Virus record (IMG/VR): IMGVR_UViG_3300017991_000002
Span: 124,001 to 188,000 of that record
Length of the DNA: 64,000 nucleotides
Direction: 5' to 3' (one strand)
The notes beneath the pieces are model-generated. The model saw only the letters and a program-made list of their open reading frames with translations. It searched no databases and was not told the DNA's origin. The position numbers were made by a program, and so were the translations under genes. Numbering within the stretch: position 1 is the first letter of the stretch; every line of letters begins with the position of its first letter. Positions 7,088 to 50,005 of this stretch are shown here, one piece after another.

Positions 7088-7840
7088 ATGTATATAAATG
7101 GCTTCTCCGTAAGGATACCACAGGGTTTCGAGCAAAATGGCTACATTCTCATGAAGCATGAGACTGTCTACACAATCCGACTCAGAAATACTCGAGAGGA
7201 ATTGTGTGATGCTTATGTTGAAATAGACGGCCAATATGTTGGAACCTGGCAAATAGAACCAAAAAGCTCCCTGGAACTAGAACACCCGGCCAATGACGAC
7301 GGTCGATTTACGTTCTATACAGTGAGCTCGAAGGCAGGAAAGCAAGCCAACCTTCCCACAAGAGATCCCAATCTTGGGCTCATCAGGGTAACATTTACCC
7401 CAGAATTAGCATCGTTCCAGGGTTTATCCGAGGGTGTAAAGTTTCCCACATCCGATGCTGTGAGAACTTACTGGTATGGAAGAGATCCTACTCCGGGTCG
7501 GATTATTGATCCCGCTATTACTTGAACATATTCTGGCAGCAGTGCAGTTATGTATTGCAGTTCCGGGGGACCCCAGTCATGTAACCTCTCCCCGGAATCC
7601 CAAGCAGGGGGAACAGGATTGTCCGGTAAAAGTGAGCAGGAGTATGATGCTCAAGATCCTGTATCGAATCCAGATACCGAGCAGCAGACAGTTATACAGG
7701 TAAGACTCGTTGAGAAGGAAATGTCCAAAGGTCCGAGGCAACTTATCGCCTCAAATTCTACCCCTTATCCTCCCCCATTGCCTGTTGGCAGAGGAGGGAG
7801 AACAGTAACCACCAGAAAATTGAATCTGGACAGTGATTAA
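7088..7840 (+). pseudogene. Single hypothetical gene interrupted by an in-frame TGA (7523-7525): nonsense allele or readthrough
   Basis: ORFs 7088..7525 and 7550..7840 share a frame and only one TGA separates them. The first ATG has an AAAGGAG SD; ATG 7550 has none. Confidence 0.6.
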
Positions 7841-7882
7841 ACCTCGGTCCGTGCGGGGCCCTTTTTACAGAGGAGAAAATAT

Positions 7883-8050
7883 ATGGAACATATCTCACGA
7901 GCAATTTGTGGCTCCGTAGCATTTGCTGCCGCAGCCGCTCTCATTATTATTAAGGGGAGTATTGCGTGGCCTATTGTCTTTATTTTCGTTGGCTTAGCTG
8001 TTATGTCTTCATCTTTGGGAGGAGAGGAAGAGGAGAAGAAGGATGGTTAA
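7883..8050 (+). CDS. Small membrane protein (55 aa, two hydrophobic segments)
   Basis: AGAGGAG SD; AICGSVAFAAAAALIII-K-GSIAWPIVFIFVGLAVM followed by an acidic tail. Confidence 0.65.
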   Translation: MEHISRAICGSVAFAAAAALIIIKGSIAWPIVFIFVGLAVMSSSLGGEEEEKKDG

Positions 8051-8321
8051 GACAAGAAGACCAGTCTTTTATACCATAAAAAAGAGTGAATTCTTGTTTG
8101 AAGAGATGAATCGTATAGGGCTGAAGTTGAAGAATATGAGGGATATGGTTACATCGGACAGAAGAATATCGAAAAGAGAATGGGAGGAGTTTATACTGAA
8201 TTCTGCAGAGTCTCAGAAGATGATAAAGGATTGGACAAAATGTGTGGCTGTTTTGAAAGAGACCATAAATGATCAGAGAATAAAACCAAATAAAGAGGAG
8301 ATTGAGAGTGATGATATTTGA
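8043..8321 (+). CDS. Hypothetical protein
   Basis: 92-aa ORF with GAGGAG SD, overlapping both neighbours. Confidence 0.7.
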   Translation: MVKTRRPVFYTIKKSEFLFEEMNRIGLKLKNMRDMVTSDRRISKREWEEFILNSAESQKMIKDWTKCVAVLKETINDQRIKPNKEEIESDDI

Positions 8322-10737: not shown

Positions 10738-11736
10738 ATGCAAGACCCTGCATTCAATTATGAAATAATGATCAATGATCCTGTACGATTGCTTATACTT
10801 GAAAGTATTAAGAAGATTACCAGTGATCCTGTAGAGGTTAGAAGAAATTCGGCAGTTATTCATTACAGCAGGATACCCGAAATAGTGTCAGTTATCTGCC
10901 CTTTCGGTGAAGATCAATTTCAGATAGCCTCTGCCGCTCATGCTTTTCCAGCCATCTCCACAAGAATGGGTACGATTCCAGTACATTATGACACATATCA
11001 CAACCGGGCTATTCACGATATGAGCTTTGACTCCCTGGCAAAGGAAATTGCCTTTCAGATCGATAAGAGGTGTTTGGATCTTATGGAGGATTCTGCATGT
11101 TTTAGAAGGCACTGTCCTATGGAAATAATCCTTGATAACGATACCAATCGCCGATATTTTCTTGAGGGGTATCTTGAGGACACTTTATTTGAGGTCATCA
11201 GTCGTGTAATACAGCAAAGCAGTTATCCCTCAACATTCATGGTTACTGGAGATGCCATAGCAAGGATGTTGAGACATTCTAACCACTTCATGGATTCCAG
11301 TATAACTGAAGGCCCGCCCTCTAGGTCAGAGGGGTATATTCGACACTTCGGGAATTTAGGGAATTGTACTGTATATTCAAGCCCCTTGAGGACGAATGGA
11401 ACTACTTTGATCGGGTCTTTAAGTCCACATAGTTGTCGCCAAGGAGACAGATCATTTGACTGCGGTTTCGTTTATGCTCCATATCTTCCGTTGTCATCGG
11501 TACCAGTATCCATTCCGGCCAATGCTTGGATGGAAATATCGTCACTACGACCCAGAGGGATAGAAAGTCGATACGGAGCGGTTGTTGTTAACCCAAACTT
11601 CTATGCTACCCTTCACTTCGATGTCCGTAACTCAGAAGAGCTTTTATCTGTACCGTCTACAAAACCACCTTACTATCCTAAACCAACCAAGATAGAGTAT
11701 AAAAGAAAGTTAAAGGTGATAAGAAGCAATGGTTAA
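10738..11736 (+). CDS. Diverged T4 gp23/gp24-like capsid-fold paralogue
   Basis: EIAFQIDKRCLDLM and GFVYAPYLPL...GIESRYGAVVVNPNFY align by eye with EELKFEIDREIIRDL and GYIYAPYIPL...ALGTQYGKKVVWDKFY in this window's major capsid protein. Confidence 0.75.
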   Translation: MQDPAFNYEIMINDPVRLLILESIKKITSDPVEVRRNSAVIHYSRIPEIVSVICPFGEDQFQIASAAHAFPAISTRMGTIPVHYDTYHNRAIHDMSFDSLAKEIAFQIDKRCLDLMEDSACFRRHCPMEIILDNDTNRRYFLEGYLEDTLFEVISRVIQQSSYPSTFMVTGDAIARMLRHSNHFMDSSITEGPPSRSEGYIRHFGNLGNCTVYSSPLRTNGTTLIGSLSPHSCRQGDRSFDCGFVYAPYLPLSSVPVSIPANAWMEISSLRPRGIESRYGAVVVNPNFYATLHFDVRNSEELLSVPSTKPPYYPKPTKIEYKRKLKVIRSNG

Positions 11737-44450: not shown

Positions 44451-45117
44451 CTTCTAATTCAACCATTAACCGCTCTTTTTCGGCAGTAGCCTCACCTTTC
44501 AGCTGTGCACCATTGAGTTGGACCCCTCCGCCAGCGGTAGGAACATTACCGAACTTCTCCCTAACTTCCCCAAGCGTTTCTCTTGCCTCCGCCAGGGCCC
44601 ACCTCTTTACCCATTCCTGCCACGTTACCGGAACAGTCATCAATTTATGGTCAATGTTATACATGTAGAAGATGTGGGTTGCTGTAGACGGAACATTGGT
44701 TACATGAAGGTACGGAGGATCAAATCTCCAATCAAAAGCGGCGGAGTAGATATTATTAGCCGTCTCCTGCCACATAAGATATGCTTCATACTTCTCCATC
44801 TCCAGACCCGGAATTCTGTACTCATAAGGAATAGGGAATCCAAAACCGTGCGAAAGGTCAAGAACATTCCTGGATCCAACACTCACTGCATAAATACCTC
44901 GGCTACCAAAGTCACATAACTGATAGCGTTCCCTTTCCGGAACAACCGGTATAGCATTCATCATCTTCAACGGTTTGAATTTGCTGAAAATAGACAAAGC
45001 AGACTGCAGGGCATCAGTAAAGTCCTCAGTAGTAATCTCTATATCTATCGAAGACCCACCAAGCTTCCTTCTTGTCCAAGCAACAATTTCTTCTTCTGTA
45101 AATTCCTTCAGCGCCAT
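44416..45117 (-). CDS. Neck protein (gp13-like)
   Basis: RKLGGSSIDIEIT.E...DA ... WVKRWALAEARETLGEVREKF...P..GGGVQLNG..LK.EA..E.E.L. Confidence 0.9.
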   Translation of the reverse strand: MALKEFTEEEIVAWTRRKLGGSSIDIEITTEDFTDALQSALSIFSKFKPLKMMNAIPVVPERERYQLCDFGSRGIYAVSVGSRNVLDLSHGFGFPIPYEYRIPGLEMEKYEAYLMWQETANNIYSAAFDWRFDPPYLHVTNVPSTATHIFYMYNIDHKLMTVPVTWQEWVKRWALAEARETLGEVREKFGNVPTAGGGVQLNGAQLKGEATAEKERLMVELEGGRGDLPPTWG

Positions 45118-45584
45118 TAAACTTTCTCGAGAATGAAGTCAATGATTTCCGACTTCTTTGCATCAGCCGGGACATCTCCTAAATCATGCTCCTCAATCAT
45201 ACGCCTCAGTTCACGTACCGTATGACCTTCCAAGTCTTCCCGAGTCAGTGTTCCATCCTCTTCTGCCTCGGCAGATTCTTCAACAGGCTCGGCAACCTCT
45301 ACAGGGGCCTCTTCCACTACTTCTTTCACGGGCTCCTCAGCAACCTCTTTCTTCTTCGGTGCTGCCGTCTTGTAGCCTATGCTCTTCAGGTACACTCCTC
45401 GATAGTACTCGACTTTCTCATCAGTCCATTCAGCCAAGAGTCCTCTCTCGACCAGAGGTAGATAGTAGTCACCGCTCACAGTCTCCGGTTTCTTCCCAGG
45501 AACCACAGGATTAAGAGCCATCCTACCACCGTTCTCGGACGTGAAAAAAATCTTAAAAGGTTTTGCATTGTAATACTCGGCCAT
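45117..45584 (-). CDS. Protein with C-terminal Rho-N/HeH-like helical domain
   Basis: LEGHTVRELRRMIEEHDL......KKSEIIDFIL after an acidic linker. Confidence 0.65.
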   Translation of the reverse strand: MAEYYNAKPFKIFFTSENGGRMALNPVVPGKKPETVSGDYYLPLVERGLLAEWTDEKVEYYRGVYLKSIGYKTAAPKKKEVAEEPVKEVVEEAPVEVAEPVEESAEAEEDGTLTREDLEGHTVRELRRMIEEHDLGDVPADAKKSEIIDFILEKV

Positions 45585-45646: not shown

Positions 45647-48387
45647 TTACGGTGAAGTAAACACGTTACCGCTGCAGTAGAACTTGTCCCAAACGACTTT
45701 CTTGCCGTACTGAGTCCCCAACGCTTTACGAACGACGAAATCGTCGAGGGTAATGGTCGGAGTTTCATACAGCGGGATATACGGTGCATAAATGTAACCG
45801 GTTTCCAGGAATGAAACACCCTTATACCCGACGAGGAAATCCGTCGCCGTCATATAAGGATCTTTGTAACAATCCCATTTCCCTTGAAGAGTCCCAATCT
45901 TCATGACACCCATACCGCCGGTAGCACCAGACGGAACAAAACCAGGCAGAGTTTCGATGATGTTACAAACCTCAACACCAGCGACAACCCAGTTGCCCGT
46001 TGCACGTCTGGTCTGCTGAAAGATCAGGTTAGAGGCTTCAACAAGGGTATCGAGGAATGCCTGTTTGTGCTCTGTCCAGGAAACACCCGTCGGGAGCTTC
46101 CGGTCAAAAGACACGGTACCTGCAGCAGCGATATTGGTCAAATCGCGGATTATTTCGCGGTCAATTTCAAATTTGCACTTTTGTTACTACCATCATTTGA
46201 TGGCGGGCAGGTCATCTCTGCCTGCCTCTCTACGTCACCGTAGAGGTCTGACTATATCTTCACCCACCGCTTCCTGAAGCGGGGAGGGGGCTGCCGTAGC
46301 CTCTGCAGTTTCCCACAGAGACGTAGTCGATGAACTAGAGAAAAGGAAATCTTCAGTCAAAACCAGAAAGTAAGCACTGTTTTTGGAGCACCAAGCTCGA
46401 GCGGCCTCAAACTTCTCCTCACAATAGCTCAAGAAACTTTCAGGTTTGATCTCAACCAGGAACTTTCGCCCGTCAACGAGAGTTACCAGGTAGTCCGGCA
46501 CATAGTGCTGAAACGATCCATAAGGTATTACTACCTCTTCGTACTGAATATTTGCCACGATCAGGTCGGTATCGATCAATTCCAGGAACTTCAATTCATA
46601 CGAAGACCTGTAATAAAATCTTCCCAATCTGCCGCTAAGGTAACCAGTTTTATACTGATTATTATTTCGCCTGCCCTCTGCAATCATCTTGGCCATACCC
46701 AACGAGACCTTCTTCCGATTTTCAGGATCCTTATACCTCTCCACCTGAGCCTCAGAAATCTTCTTTCTCCATTCCGGGGTTATGACCTTACCAAGAGCAC
46801 CCTGACTCATACTTTCCCTAGCCTCTTCTGAGGTATCAGTTCCAAGACGATTTCTTGTCCGTCTTGCAGCATCAGCACATTTCGGATTGTCTTTATTGGC
46901 CTTGGATATACTATCTCGATGAGACTGACTCAATTTAACTCCTTTATGAGACAGGCTCATTTGCTTTTTAGCATATCTTGAGACTATGGCATGATCTTTC
47001 TTATATACGTCAAGATCGATCTCCGGATGTGCATGCCTCAAATGACTAAGCAAATTATGAGCTTTATACTCTTTGCAGATTTGGCAAGTTATTTTTTCCA
47101 TCTTTTCTCCAGCTGCTGATTGTCTCACAGCTCGTGAGAGGTTCCAGCAATTAAGCAGCTTGTAACGCCCAGCATCTCTGCTGAGGGAGCCCAGTTTCGT
47201 TAAGCTCTTCCGCGAGGACCGCAACCAATTCTGCCTCTGCTTCAATCCCGTGAACATTCCGCAGGTTAGCAGCAGCTTCCATTGACCATCGGCTTCTCAG
47301 CTTACGGGTCCGTGCGATGACGGGCGAGCTGGTAAGCACCAAGTCAACCTCAGGCAGATTCGGGTTTCCTTCCATGTTGTAATCATACGTGGAAGTGACC
47401 AGGGTTGTATTATCAATAGTGTTACTAAAAGTCACACTGACTGAACCAGACGAGTAGTCAATGGTTCCTGTTCCATCACCGGTAAATCCCCCTGCTCCAT
47501 CATCCGTAACGGTCAGATCAGAGGCAGCGGCAGTACTGTAACCGGTGACTGTAATCGTACCAGGACGGATTGGGATAAAAGACAGAGAGCCGGTATAAGG
47601 ACCAGTAGTACCATTGGCCGTAGCAACCGTCTCAGACTCGACCTTCTCTGAGCTGTAGTAATCAGCCGCAGCAGTGTAGCCCTGAGTATCTTCAATTACC
47701 TGGCCTTTGCTGATGGCGCCTTTATTGGTACCATAAACAAACTGCAGATAGAAGACGATACTGGCAGGTCCCAGCATAGGCTGAACACTGACCAGATCAG
47801 TAGCGATCAGGTTCGGGAATATAGCTCGAATCAACGGGACTTAATTCTGCTATATTTGTTATTTACAGGGCTCTTTATCCCTGTGCTCCGATTTCTCGGA
47901 GGATCGGATCATATCATCTTCCTGGGTACTATCTTTCAGGAAGCCAGGCGCTCGTGCCTCTGTTACTGCTTTCGCTCGAGAGGTGATCTCTGAACCTTCT
48001 TCAGCCCTGGAGATATTCATCGTTACGTCTGAAGCTTGGCTGCTGATTGTCTTAGATGTAAATATGTCTGACATATGAAGATTTCCAGCAATTCACCTGG
48101 TTATTCGACAGCCATTACTGACTGAAGGCGCTCCCATTTAATCCATAAGTTTTACAGAGTGGCAACGCGAATTTTTCGAAGTTTGCTATTCCCGGAGAAG
48201 TCGTAGTCGTTGTTTCATACAGAGGATCTTTATTGGCGAAAAATCGATGCTGGCTTTCCAGCAAGAAAGCTGTCACCGTTCGCTTATAATCGTCCTCAAT
48301 AGATTCGCAAAGAGGTGACCATTTTGGGGAATTAGCAAGGCTCTCCCCTTTCTGGGTCATCTCTTCAACTAACATTTGCCGTTCCAT
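45647..48387 (-). CDS. Major capsid protein (T4 gp23-like) in three exons: complement(join(45647..46175,47203..47839,48165..48387)), 462 aa
   Basis: Splicing gives ...FEKFA/FPLIRAIFPNLIATDLVSVQPM... and ...LAEEL/KFEIDREII...; gp23 motifs TRKLRSRWSMEAA.NL and YAPYIPL. Joined length 223+637+529=1389 nt. Confidence 0.92.
46176..47202 (-). mobile_element. Group I intron (1027 nt) carrying a putative homing endonuclease
   Basis: The 5' exon ends GAGCU; the intron starts UAACGAAAC and ends G. IGS GGCUC; P AAUUGCUGGAA (47152-47142), Q AAUCAGCAG (47121-47113), R GUUCAUCGACUA (46335-46324), S AAGAUAUAGUC (46260-46250). Confidence 0.92.
46235..47101 (-). CDS. Intron-encoded endonuclease: Zn finger, NUMOD3-like repeats and TnsA-N-like PD-(D/E)XK domain (288 aa)
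   Basis: CQIC...HLRHAH; HKGVKLSQSHRDSISKA and GKVITPEWRKKISEA; YRSSYEL.F...YVPDYLV...LVEIKP. GGAG SD upstream of ATG 47101. Confidence 0.85.
   Translation of the reverse strand: MEKITCQICKEYKAHNLLSHLRHAHPEIDLDVYKKDHAIVSRYAKKQMSLSHKGVKLSQSHRDSISKANKDNPKCADAARRTRNRLGTDTSEEARESMSQGALGKVITPEWRKKISEAQVERYKDPENRKKVSLGMAKMIAEGRRNNNQYKTGYLSGRLGRFYYRSSYELKFLELIDTDLIVANIQYEEVVIPYGSFQHYVPDYLVTLVDGRKFLVEIKPESFLSYCEEKFEAARAWCSKNSAYFLVLTEDFLFSSSSTTSLWETAEATAAPSPLQEAVGEDIVRPLR
47840..48164 (-). ncRNA. Group I intron (325 nt) without an endonuclease ORF
   Basis: The 5' exon ends GCGU and the intron ends G. IGS AAUGGGA-G-CGC (48138-48128) pairs with both exons; P AAUUGCUGGAAA, Q AAUCAGCAG, R GUUCAGAGAUCA, S GAUAUGAUCC. 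Confidence 0.92.
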
Positions 48388-48415: not shown

Positions 48416-50005
48416 TTATCTCCAACCGTGTTTCTTGATAACTTTTCTTGCCAGGACCGCTGAAGAATTGTCCTGGACATCCTCCATGAGCCAACTTTCA
48501 TCATCCTCGTTAAAGTCCAAGGAATCCCCATCACCTTCTTGTCCTTCATACAAGTATCGAGATCCGCCTGTCGGCAGGGGCTCCAAGTCCATTCCTCTCC
48601 CGGAAACTACTGGTGATCCCAATGCTTCCCGGTAACCTTCCAACAAGTTAAGTGTCTGCACCATCTCCTCTTGGCTCTGGCACTGCTCCAGGATAGGTTT
48701 CAGAAACTCGGCATGCGGGTGGTCTTCGAGGATCCCCTCAAGATACGATGTGATCTGGGCCTCGTTCCCTTTTTCGAGCACGGATTCTAAGACATCTACA
48801 GATGCATTGTACTTCTCGGTTATGTCTTCGAGAGCTCCTTCCAACTGCTCTGCATACTCTGACAAAGACTCGATCTGCTTTTCTTGTTCTTCCAATCCTT
48901 CTGCCACTTCAGCAGAGCCCTCTTCGACTCTCTCTTCAAGCCTAGTCGTCAGCTCTTCGATGATTGCTTCAGATGCACCCAATTCCTCTTCCAAGGCGTT
49001 ATATGATTCAGCCATTTCACGGAATCGGTTCTTCATTTCATCGATGACGGCGACAGAGGCATTATACTTCCCCTGGATCTCGTTGAGAGTGCTTTTATCT
49101 TCTACGATAGCAGCCATCTGCTCTTGAAGAAGTTCAACATTCTCATTGATTACTTTATTATCCAGAGTACCATTTTCTTTCTCTTTCGGCATGGTATTTC
49201 CTCCTTCGGATATATTTTTACACTCTTCAGTCCCGTATGGTATCTTGGGTTGAATCAGTTCGTTTGCTTGTGATATCTCCTCTCGCAAAATGGAAACGAC
49301 GTCCTTCGTGCCTTCGGCATCCAGTCCATCGGTGTTCTCTATACTCATAAGGGCACATCTGTGCTCCTCTAATTTCAACGACATCTCAACCAGCTCGGCA
49401 GTTTCCTTTTCTTCCAAATCCTCGAGGTCAAGCCCTTTAAGATAATTGCTTATCTCCTCGAGCTTTGACACTGCCTCTACCGGGGAGAACTCAATACTTT
49501 CTGACAAAACTGCTGGAAAGGCGCCGGCAGTTGAAGGGTTGGCCACGAAGTCCCACGTCTCCAATTTATAATCGTCTTGAACGATCGGTTTGTCCCTCCC
49601 AAGGCTGCCAGTTCCTCGTGAAGAGATACCGACTCGAGTTCCGCCTTTAAACAGTTCTTGGAGTATTTTCCCGTTCGGGGTATCGAGAATTTCTGCCTCC
49701 CCGATTATAGTTCCATCGTCCTGAATATCGACTCCGGTAATTATGTGGGAGACCCTTTGAAGAGATGTTTTACCAGAACTCGGATGGTCCAACTCCCCGA
49801 ACATCCCTCGATTATCAAGCCTATCCCTAACTTTTTGCTCTTTGAGCTTTTTTCCGAACAGACCGTTCGGATAGATCCTACCGTTCTCGTTCTGAACACC
49901 TTCACGTTGGAAGACGCCTTTGACCTTCATCCGCTTCGATCCGTCGCCTTCCTCCAATATCTGGTATTGGAACGGTATCACATCAATAAGTAGTTGCTCT
50001 GTCAT
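48416..50005 (-). CDS. Prohead protease (gp21-like) fused to a coiled-coil scaffold (gp22-like)
   Basis: GVFQREGVQNENGRIYP, GELDHP, RVSHII, ILDTPNGKIL, GISSRGTGS, WDFVANPS; then about 300 aa of acidic coiled coil. Confidence 0.93.
   Translation of the reverse strand: MTEQLLIDVIPFQYQILEEGDGSKRMKVKGVFQREGVQNENGRIYPNGLFGKKLKEQKVRDRLDNRGMFGELDHPSSGKTSLQRVSHIITGVDIQDDGTIIGEAEILDTPNGKILQELFKGGTRVGISSRGTGSLGRDKPIVQDDYKLETWDFVANPSTAGAFPAVLSESIEFSPVEAVSKLEEISNYLKGLDLEDLEEKETAELVEMSLKLEEHRCALMSIENTDGLDAEGTKDVVSILREEISQANELIQPKIPYGTEECKNISEGGNTMPKEKENGTLDNKVINENVELLQEQMAAIVEDKSTLNEIQGKYNASVAVIDEMKNRFREMAESYNALEEELGASEAIIEELTTRLEERVEEGSAEVAEGLEEQEKQIESLSEYAEQLEGALEDITEKYNASVDVLESVLEKGNEAQITSYLEGILEDHPHAEFLKPILEQCQSQEEMVQTLNLLEGYREALGSPVVSGRGMDLEPLPTGGSRYLYEGQEGDGDSLDFNEDDESWLMEDVQDNSSAVLARKVIKKHGWR

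What the first reader, a model, noticed from the sequence alone, without database searches (positions are those of the whole stretch)
45647..48387. Major capsid gene interrupted by two group I introns
Seen: three exons joined by two introns with complete P/Q/R/S cores, U-ending 5' exons and terminal G. Splicing restores AFPLIRAIFPNL and EELKFEIDREII in a 462-aa frame; unspliced RNA hits stops at 48115 and 47151. The introns share GACAAUCAGCAGC and AAUUGCUGGAA, suggesting kinship. Known: most described phage group I introns lie in DNA-metabolism genes (td, nrdB, nrdD, DNA polymerase). Inference: the most abundant virion protein depends on two splicing events, a possible control point for head assembly. 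Gene callers will fragment this locus.
Basis: partly seen in the sequence, partly recalled or inferred. Interest (0 to 1): 0.85.

Follow-up and report, generated by a model that had tools for sequence, protein, structure and literature searches.

The report
Phage capsid gene with two introns
The gene for the main shell protein of an uncultured large tailed phage really is split by two self-splicing-type (group I) introns, one carrying its own DNA-cutting "homing" enzyme; this is a well-supported new example of a known phenomenon, and related phages show that this gene is an intron hot spot.

Summary
Observation confirmed. On the minus strand, 48387..45647 holds a gp23-family major capsid gene in three exons (48387-48165, 47839-47203, 46175-45647; 1389 nt, 462 aa). 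Intron 1 (48164-47840, 325 nt, no ORF) scores 64.2 bits against Rfam RF00028 (cut-off 50). Intron 2 (47202-46176, 1027 nt) carries a 288-aa endonuclease ORF in its P6 loop, so the model only finds its halves below cut-off.

Both junctions are fixed independently. A 71-84% identical relative (L002) lacks intron 1 and reads exactly the predicted ligated sequence. In 108 of 120 full-length homologues exactly one residue separates the exon 2 and exon 3 matches. Both introns recur at the same sites in a 47-64% identical relative (L146). They keep 93-95% of predicted pairs, with 15 and 25 two-sided changes against 0-6 in controls.

The "kinship" strings are generic core elements, found in at least 113 IMG/VR stretches. 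The "control point" idea has no support. Capsid-gene introns are already known (Tuc2009, mycobacteriophage LittleE), so this is a new member of a known kind. New here: the endonuclease is TnsA-like PD-(D/E)XK, and relatives carry up to four or more introns at other sites in this gene.

The parts
48165..48387 (-). MCP exon 1 (74 codons + 1 nt; ATG 48387, AGGAGG Shine-Dalgarno at 48398-48393; ends in U)
   Evidence: Sequence. phrog_138 major head protein, positions 7-60. Aligns to residues 7-72 of intron-less homologue P0003.
47840..48164 (-). Group I intron 1 (325 nt, no endonuclease ORF). Guide sequence UGGGAGCGC 48136-48128; P 48093-48083; Q 48051-48039; R 47995-47984; S 47918-47906; P9 47901-47886; P9.1 47884-47865; terminal G 47840.
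   Evidence: Rfam RF00028 64.2 bits vs cut-off 50, E 5.5e-14. Absent from L002, whose DNA reads GCGTTCCCG, the exact predicted ligation. Present at the same site in L146 (54.3 bits). 15 two-sided changes, 93% of cells paired. Element coordinates.
47203..47839 (-). MCP exon 2 (637 nt; ends in U)
   Evidence: Pfam Gp23 2.4e-27, profile positions 10-181. phrog_138 positions 66-232.
46176..47202 (-). Group I intron 2 (1027 nt) with the ORF in the P6 loop. Guide sequence GGGCUC 47192-47187; P2 47183-47170; P3 47159-47154 / 46295-46290; P 47152-47142; Q 47124-47112; P6 47110-47102 / 46345-46337; R 46335-46323; extra hairpin 46322-46299; P8 46288-46263; S 46261-46248; P9 46245-46228; P9.1 46226-46206; P9.2 46203-46190; terminal G 46176.
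   Evidence: Rfam half-hits 24.0 and 29.6 bits. Core alignment of window/L002/L146: 101 pairs, 94.6% paired, 25 two-sided changes vs 2-6 in slid controls. Same site occupied in L002, L146 and L147. Element coordinates.
46235..47101 (-). Intron-encoded homing-endonuclease candidate, 288 aa. N-terminal CxxC...HxxxH zinc-finger-like motif, repeated helical DNA-binding-like modules, C-terminal TnsA-like PD-(D/E)XK nuclease (E169, D203, E217, K219). The stop UGA lies in the GUGA loop of P9.
   Evidence: Pfam PF08722 41.2 bits vs cut-off 26.5. phrog_15427 endonuclease. Invariant SSYE / PD / ExK columns. Foldseek top hits TnsA 1t0f/1f1z, prob 1.00. dN/dS 0.19 vs L002.
45647..46175 (-). MCP exon 3 (529 nt including TAA 45649-45647)
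   Evidence: Pfam Gp23 3e-32, profile positions 185-354. dN/dS 0.07 vs L002.

Best explanation
The late transcript of a gp23-family major capsid gene carries two phage-type group I introns, each with an extra hairpin between P7 and P3'.

Splicing (inferred from the family): each intron folds into the P3-P9 ribozyme core. External guanosine attacks after the exon-terminal U, which sits in a U-G wobble of P1 (GCGU with AGCGC for intron 1; GAGCU with GGCUC for intron 2). The freed exon end then attacks after the terminal G. The two ligations produce a 1389-nt reading frame for a 462-aa capsid protein. Without splicing, translation stops after 90 codons (intron 1) or inside intron 2.

Intron 2 is a mobile element. 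Its P6 loop encodes a 288-aa TnsA-like PD-(D/E)XK endonuclease. Presumably this enzyme cuts intron-less capsid alleles of co-infecting relatives near the GAAGAGCT|CAAATTTGAA junction, and repair then copies the intron in (homing). Its ribosome-binding site (GGAG) is one strand of P6, and its last ~36 codons overlap the catalytic core. Endonuclease translation and ribozyme folding are therefore probably mutually exclusive.

Intron 1 has no ORF. It is a presence/absence polymorphism among close relatives. It must depend on an endonuclease supplied in trans, on co-conversion, or on vertical descent.

Shown here: gene identity, intron boundaries, conserved RNA pairing, nuclease fold and motifs, purifying selection. 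Inferred: actual self-splicing, cleavage specificity, homing.
For: Intron identity:
- Rfam hit above cut-off for intron 1. Both halves of intron 2 are detected.

Junctions:
- L002 lacks intron 1 and matches the predicted ligated sequence at nucleotide level.
- L003, L004 and L005 are intron-less at site 2; L003 and L005 align across it without an indel. L149 is intron-less at both sites.
- 108 of 120 full-length homologues leave exactly 1 residue at junction 2. 20 of 26 leave exactly 1 at junction 1.
- In an alignment of 100 homologues, each exon pair is separated by a single column. Both sites lie in the top ~15% most conserved columns.

RNA structure:
- Intron 1: 56 pairs, 93% paired, 15 two-sided changes vs 0-2 in controls.
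- Intron 2: 101 pairs, 94.6% paired, 25 two-sided changes vs 2-6 in controls. Covariation is seen in P2, P3, P4, P5, P7, the extra hairpin, P8, P9 and P9.1.

Independent recurrence: the same organisation appears in separate assemblies (IMG/VR, Logan, ENA).

Selection: exon 3 dN/dS is 0.07 and the endonuclease 0.19. The endonuclease tail that overlaps the ribozyme core has dN about equal to dS, with low dS.

Nuclease: Pfam, invariant motifs and fold.
Against: - There are no RNA data, so splicing itself is unobserved.
- Intron 2 does not reach the Rfam cut-off as one unit, because the ORF splits it.
- P10 is weak for intron 2 (2-3 pairs).
- Subgroup assignment (IA2) was not formally tested.
- The endonuclease's target and activity are untested. 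TnsA-like enzymes are not an established homing-endonuclease family in the literature I could search.
- How the ORF-less intron 1 spreads is unknown.
Confidence: 0.9

Rival explanations
1. Splicing of the two introns is a regulated checkpoint. It would gate or time capsid-protein supply, for example through GTP level, coupling to translation, or competition between endonuclease translation and folding.
For: The capsid protein cannot be made without both splicing events. The endonuclease's ribosome-binding site is sequestered in P6 and its ORF overlaps the core, so some interplay between translation and folding is likely. The review PMC3984707 notes that ORFs extending into the core are tightly controlled.
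Against: L002, a close relative, does without intron 1. Many homologues have no introns at all. Insertion sites differ between relatives, which is the signature of selfish colonisation rather than a conserved regulatory device. No regulatory element was found.
Confidence: 0.06
2. One or both introns are decayed and splicing-dead. The capsid gene would then be a pseudogene in a defective or mis-assembled genome.
For: There is no direct splicing evidence. Intron 2 falls below the Rfam cut-off. A second Gp23-family ORF exists at 10738-11736.
Against: Exon dN/dS is 0.07. Compensatory changes maintain every core helix. The same arrangement appears in at least 4 independent assemblies. The paralogue is only 24% identical and 332 aa, which looks like a gp24-type vertex protein rather than a replacement.
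Confidence: 0.03
3. The interruptions are not spliced at RNA level. The gene would be a split gene with free-standing endonuclease insertions, and the capsid protein would be assembled from separate polypeptides, or the inserts would be inteins.
For: Split phage genes separated by endonuclease genes are known, for example a nucleotide reductase gene (PMC10448857). ORF lists offer TTG starts near the exon 2 and exon 3 beginnings.
Against: The inserts contain in-frame stops, so they are not inteins. They have full group I cores with covariation. Intron 1 has no ORF at all. No Shine-Dalgarno sequence precedes exon 2 or exon 3. The junctions fall within codons (phase 1 and phase 2).
Confidence: 0.01

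Closest known systems
Group I intron with endonuclease in the major capsid gene of mycobacteriophage LittleE (Cluster J; PMC3706429), and the capsid-gene intron of lactococcal phage Tuc2009 (cited there)
   Same: A self-splicing-type intron interrupts the most abundant virion protein's gene. The 5' exon ends in U and the intron ends in G. An intron-less allele exists in close relatives. The intron carries an endonuclease.
   Different: Those cases are single introns in HK97-type siphovirus capsid genes, with an HNH endonuclease in LittleE. Here there are two introns in a T4 gp23-family gene of a ~205-kb myovirus contig, and the endonuclease is TnsA-like PD-(D/E)XK. LittleE splicing was shown experimentally; splicing here is not.
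T4 td / nrdB / nrdD (sunY) introns and the Twort orf142 triple-intron gene (phage-type IA introns; PMC2988022, PMC3984707; Twort reference cited in PMC6669764)
   Same: Same core consensus (AAUUGC.GGAAA ... AAUC.GCAGC; GUUCA.AGA..A; AGAUAU.GUC). An ORF sits in a peripheral loop. There are several introns in one gene (Twort). Endonuclease translation is limited by RNA structure.
   Different: The host gene is structural, not DNA metabolism. The endonuclease family differs (GIY-YIG or HNH in T4). No detectable sequence similarity to any isolated phage beyond roughly 50-nt core stretches.
Intron-rich jumbo phages (Jug phages, ~18 group I introns per genome, terL split into 2-3 pieces; PMC12880540) and the PhiPA3 intron endonuclease used in phage-phage competition (PMC11620839)
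   Same: Large uncultured phage genomes in which essential late genes are fragmented by group I introns and homing endonucleases. PDDEXK-type endonucleases are reported among the Jug phages.
   Different: Here the two capsid introns are the only group I hits in 64 kb. A competitive role is untested.

Membership tests
Group I intron (Rfam RF00028) | Covariance-model score at or above the curated cut-off (50 bits) | tested here: met
   Intron 1: 64.2 bits, E 5.5e-14. Its L146 orthologue: 54.3 bits.
Group I intron (Rfam RF00028) | Same criterion for intron 2 | tested here: inconclusive
   The halves score 24.0 and 29.6 bits, because about 0.8 kb of ORF separates P6 from P6'. The model cannot span that gap. 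The tools offer no way to score an ORF-deleted version.
Group I intron | 5' exon ends in U, paired with G of an internal guide sequence (P1); the intron ends in G | tested here: met
   Read. Intron 1: GCGU|U pairs with AGCGC, and UCCC of exon 2 pairs with GGGA (P10). Intron 2: GAGCU pairs with GGCUC. Terminal G at 47840 and 46176. The same pairings hold in L146 and L002.
Group I intron | Conserved P3-P9 core (P/Q/R/S; P3-P7 pseudoknot) maintained by compensatory change | tested here: met
   Intron 1: 15 two-sided changes in 56 pairs. Intron 2: 25 in 101 pairs. Slid controls give 0-6. Only 2-3 sequences were available per intron.
Group I intron | Excision restores the host reading frame exactly | tested here: met
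   L002 DNA equals the predicted ligation at site 1. 108 of 120 homologues leave exactly one residue at site 2. Each junction is a single alignment column.
Group I intron | Guanosine-dependent self-splicing | not testable with these tools
   Needs in-vitro transcription and splicing, or RNA-seq.
Subgroup IA2 (phage type) | Extra P7.1/P7.2 helices and subgroup-specific features | tested here: inconclusive
   In both introns one covarying hairpin lies between P7 and P3'. A second helix was not resolved, and no subgroup-specific models were available.
T4 gp23-family major capsid protein (Pfam PF07068, phrog_138) | Profile match above cut-off over the whole fold | tested here: met
   Exon 2: 96.7 bits. 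Exon 3: 112.9 bits (cut-off 24.4). Together they cover contiguous profile positions 10-354. phrog_138 positions 7-406 are covered across the three exons. 1758 library homologues.
PD-(D/E)XK homing endonuclease (TnsA-like, Pfam PF08722) | Nuclease fold with E...PD...ExK catalytic residues | tested here: met
   PF08722 41.2 bits vs cut-off 26.5. Invariant E169, P202-D203, E217-x-K219. Foldseek best hits are TnsA 1t0f/1f1z, prob 1.00, E about 1e-4; nuclease domain pLDDT is mostly 77-90.
PD-(D/E)XK homing endonuclease (TnsA-like, Pfam PF08722) | Site-specific cleavage of the intron-less allele, and homing | not testable with these tools
   Indirect evidence only. The ORF lies inside the intron, is under purifying selection (dN/dS 0.19), and travels with the intron in L002, L146 and L147.

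The most novel reading that the evidence does not exclude
The gp23-family capsid gene of this uncultured large-myovirus clade may be an undescribed hot spot of group I intron traffic.

What supports it:
- At least seven distinct insertion positions are seen among relatives.
- Up to four or more introns occur in one gene.
- There are tandem introns separated by a ~60-nt micro-exon.
- The same intron lineage sits at different nearby sites.

What it would imply: the traffic is driven in part by a TnsA-like PD-(D/E)XK enzyme that would be a new, uncharacterised family of homing endonucleases. Because it targets the capsid gene of intron-less co-infecting relatives, and such an allele co-occurs in the same sample (L149), it could act as a weapon in phage-phage competition, as shown for the PhiPA3 intron endonuclease.
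Probability: 0.35. Interest if true: 0.65.

Novelty: new member of a known kind. Interest (0 to 1): 0.45.

Why it matters
Practical value:
- Automatic annotation breaks this capsid gene into 3-4 "hypothetical" fragments. That hampers capsid-based classification of uncultured phages. The exon map given here repairs it.
- The same problem affects many relatives (L065, L143-L148).

Biological value:
- The locus gives a natural series of alleles: no intron, one intron, two introns. The same intron lineage also sits at different sites.
- It offers a candidate new homing-endonuclease type with a TnsA-like fold.
- These are good material for studying how introns colonise highly expressed late genes, and whether their endonucleases mediate competition between related phages.

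Tried and rejected
- Near-identity DNA search of the whole locus against 50,697 isolated phage genomes: no match. Distant search with intron 1 gave only ~50-nt core hits. No cultured relative was found.
- PDB sequence search with the endonuclease: nothing significant. The fold search was needed.
- Kinship of the two introns: rejected. Only the 14-nt Q and 11-nt P strings are shared, and the same pattern is found in at least 113 other viral stretches.
- Alternative 5' splice site after CACUCU (48154): considered from the sequence and rejected. The intron-less L002 sequence and the AGCGC/GGGA guide pairing fix the site after GCGU.
- A one-nucleotide slide of the intron 1 boundaries (GCGUU|...AAGU|) gives the same ligated product. 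It was rejected because it would end the intron in U.
- Sites shared with L143, L144, L145, L148 and L065: checked, and found to be different positions, 3 to ~18 codons away. Only L002, L146 and L147 share the window's sites.
- Sigma-70 promoter and terminator scan around the gene: nothing above shuffle expectation.
- Other group I introns in the window: none.
- The 71-aa ORF inside intron 1 (47859-48074): no family hit. It is treated as a chance ORF across the ribozyme core.
- I did not feed a spliced protein to any search tool.
Full report
**1. What is there**

The region lies in the late structural module of a myovirus-type genome. That module includes a tail sheath, baseplate wedge, tape measure and a prohead protease fused to a scaffold-like region. 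The window comes from a 205-kb IMG/VR contig, IMGVR_UViG_3300017991_000002.

On the minus strand an ATG at 48387, preceded by AGGAGG, opens a reading frame that is broken twice. The three coding pieces match one family in order:
- Pfam Gp23 (PF07068): exon 2 covers profile positions 10-181 and exon 3 covers 185-354.
- PHROG 138 "major head protein": positions 7-60, 66-232 and 236-406.

An HMMER scan of 1.84 billion representative proteins with exon 3 alone gave 1758 homologues. Most are 450-500 aa, and the best is 56% identical. No isolated phage is close. The best are about 35% identical: an uncultured 595-kb phage, Listeria phage LIS04 and Bacillus phage SP-15.

**2. The introns and their boundaries**

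| Feature | Coordinates | Length | Ends in |
|---|---|---|---|
| Exon 1 | 48387-48165 | 223 nt | U |
| Intron 1 | 48164-47840 | 325 nt | G |
| Exon 2 | 47839-47203 | 637 nt | U |
| Intron 2 | 47202-46176 | 1027 nt | G |
| Exon 3 | 46175-45647 | 529 nt | TAA |

The exons total 1389 nt, which is 462 codons plus the stop. Unspliced reading stops at 48115 and 47151.

Intron 1 scores 64.2 bits against Rfam RF00028 (cut-off 50, E = 5.5e-14). Intron 2 is seen only as two half-matches of 24.0 and 29.6 bits. This is because a 288-codon ORF lies between the two strands of P6.

The junctions are fixed independently of any RNA model:
- L002 is 71-84% identical in the capsid exons. It lacks intron 1, and its DNA reads ...TTTGCGTTCCCGCTGATT..., exactly the predicted ligation.
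- L003, L004 and L005 are intron-less at site 2; L003 and L005 align across it without an indel, and L005 is also uninterrupted at site 1. L149 is intron-less at both sites, and it comes from the same sample as the window.
- Of 120 full-length homologues, 108 leave exactly one residue between the exon 2 and exon 3 matches. At the exon 1/exon 2 junction, 20 of 26 leave exactly one.
- In a 100-sequence alignment each exon pair is separated by a single column, F at site 1 and I/L at site 2. Both sites lie in conserved blocks, at about the 85th percentile of column conservation.

The guide-sequence pairings fit. For intron 1, GCGU|U pairs with AGCGC, and the first bases of exon 2 (UCCC) pair with the adjacent GGGA (P10). 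For intron 2, GAGCU pairs with GGCUC, and P10 is weak.

**3. Is the RNA structure real?**

A more distant relative, L146 (capsid 47-64% identical, Logan assembly SRR29850985), carries both introns at the same two positions. L147 carries intron 2.

Intron 1, window against L146:
- 56 predicted pairs, 93% of cells are standard pairs.
- 15 pairs are changed on both sides.
- When the 3' partners are slid by 1-3 columns, pairing falls to 30-44% and two-sided changes to 0-2.

Intron 2 core, window, L002 and L146:
- 101 pairs, 94.6% paired, 25 two-sided changes.
- Slid controls give 37-48% paired and 2-6 two-sided changes.

Two-sided changes occur in P2, P3, P4, P5, P7, the extra hairpin between P7 and P3', P8, P9 and P9.1. 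With only two or three sequences per intron these counts are descriptive, but they are consistent across every helix.

The exons are under strong purifying selection (exon 3 dN/dS 0.07 against L002). The arrangement recurs in independent assemblies. A pseudogene or an assembly artefact is therefore very unlikely.

**4. The intron 2 ORF**

The ORF is 47101-46235 (288 aa) and has three parts:
- an N-terminal CxxC...HxxxH motif;
- repeated helical modules;
- a C-terminal nuclease domain.

The nuclease domain matches Pfam Tn7_TnsA-like_N (41.2 bits against a cut-off of 26.5). Eight homologues keep invariant SSYE, PD and ExK columns, corresponding to E169, D203, E217 and K219. An AlphaFold model has pLDDT mostly 77-90 in the nuclease domain. 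It finds TnsA (1t0f, 1f1z) as the only matches with E below 0.001.

The ORF is under purifying selection (dN/dS 0.19). Its last ~36 codons run through R, the extra hairpin, P3', P8, S and into the GUGA loop of P9. In that tail dN is about equal to dS (0.26 and 0.28), and dS is low. This fits constraint on the RNA rather than on the protein.

Its Shine-Dalgarno sequence, within GGAGAAAAG immediately upstream of the AUG, forms the 5' strand of a 9-bp P6 with CUUUUCUCU. Translation of the endonuclease and folding of the ribozyme therefore probably exclude each other. The review PMC3984707 describes this situation for ORFs that reach into the core.

**5.

The two shared strings are simply the P and Q core elements (the two strands of P4) of a very common phage intron class. 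BLAST finds nothing else shared between the two introns.

Intron 1's nearest relatives in the fetched loci are its L146 orthologue and 3'-core stretches of introns at other capsid-gene sites (L145, L143), rather than intron 2.

The "control point" idea has no support. Close relatives lack one or both introns, and the insertion positions vary.

**6. Wider picture found on the way**

Relatives show the same gene invaded elsewhere:
- L065 has two tandem Rfam-positive introns (70.3 and 59.3 bits). They are separated by an inferred ~60-nt micro-exon inside the conserved "FPNLIA" block. A GIY-YIG ORF lies near the 3' end.
- L143 has at least four group I hits in 4.9 kb.
- L145 has an intron 6 codons downstream of site 1 and two more further on.
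- L144 and L148 carry an intron-2-like core with a homologous TnsA-like ORF, about 14-18 codons upstream of site 2.

The conserved parts of this capsid gene are thus a recurrent landing zone.

**7. Comparison with known systems and verdict**

Group I introns in capsid genes are documented: Tuc2009, and mycobacteriophage LittleE with RT-PCR and protein sequencing (PMC3706429). Multi-intron genes are known (Twort), as are intron-rich jumbo phages (PMC12880540). This finding is a new member of a known kind.

Two features are unusual:
- The host gene is a gp23-family capsid gene with two introns.
- The endonuclease is TnsA-like. I found no literature describing TnsA-like enzymes as homing endonucleases.

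Splicing itself remains inferred.

Noticed in passing
window 10738-11736 (+): A second, uninterrupted Gp23-family ORF of 332 aa (Pfam PF07068, 40 bits; about 24% identical to exon 3). It is probably a gp24-like vertex paralogue. It lies on the opposite strand, far from the head module.
   Followed up: partly
window 48416-50005 (-): Immediately upstream of the capsid gene is a 529-aa protein. It combines a prohead serine protease domain (Peptidase_S77, phrog_207) with a long acidic coiled-coil tail. This looks like a protease-scaffold fusion.
   Followed up: partly
L065:9466-10153 (-) and 7579-8262 (-): The capsid gene of another uncultured phage has two tandem group I introns (70.3 and 59.3 bits). 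They are separated by an inferred ~60-nt micro-exon encoding ...YKRYALDMVTTIIPNLIA. A GIY-YIG endonuclease ORF interrupts the 3' end.
   Followed up: partly
L143:14-2479 (+): A 4.9-kb metagenome contig has at least four Rfam group I hits (42-66 bits), a LAGLIDADG ORF and an ORF fused to the last exon. All lie inside one gp23-family gene.
   Followed up: partly
L148:3900-5020 and L144:380-1440: An intron-2-like core with a homologous TnsA-like ORF (33-35% identical) sits about 14-18 codons upstream of the window's site 2. This suggests the same intron lineage has moved between nearby sites.
   Followed up: partly
L149:1182-2345 (+) (IMGVR_UViG_3300017991_000352): A different phage from the same sample as the window carries a completely intron-less capsid gene (44-51% identical). 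Around the site-2 junction its sequence closely matches the window's ligated sequence. It is a potential natural target for the endonuclease.
   Followed up: partly
window 46235-46345 (-): The last ~36 codons of the endonuclease ORF overlap the ribozyme core, and the stop codon UGA lies in the GUGA loop of P9. In this stretch dN is about equal to dS (0.26 and 0.28), against 0.16 and 1.12 in the ORF body.
   Followed up: yes
Pseudomonas phage vB_PsyM_KIL1 NC_030934.1:22890-22940 (hit H38): A ~50-nt match to the intron 1 core (P2-P4 region) falls under the annotated portal protein gene of KIL1-KIL5. It may be an unannotated intron.
   Followed up: no
window 45117-45584 (-): The 155-aa ORF just downstream of the capsid gene has an acidic low-complexity middle. 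Its C-terminal ~80 residues match phrog_3281 ('endonuclease VII', 1.6e-7). Its function is unclear.
   Followed up: no
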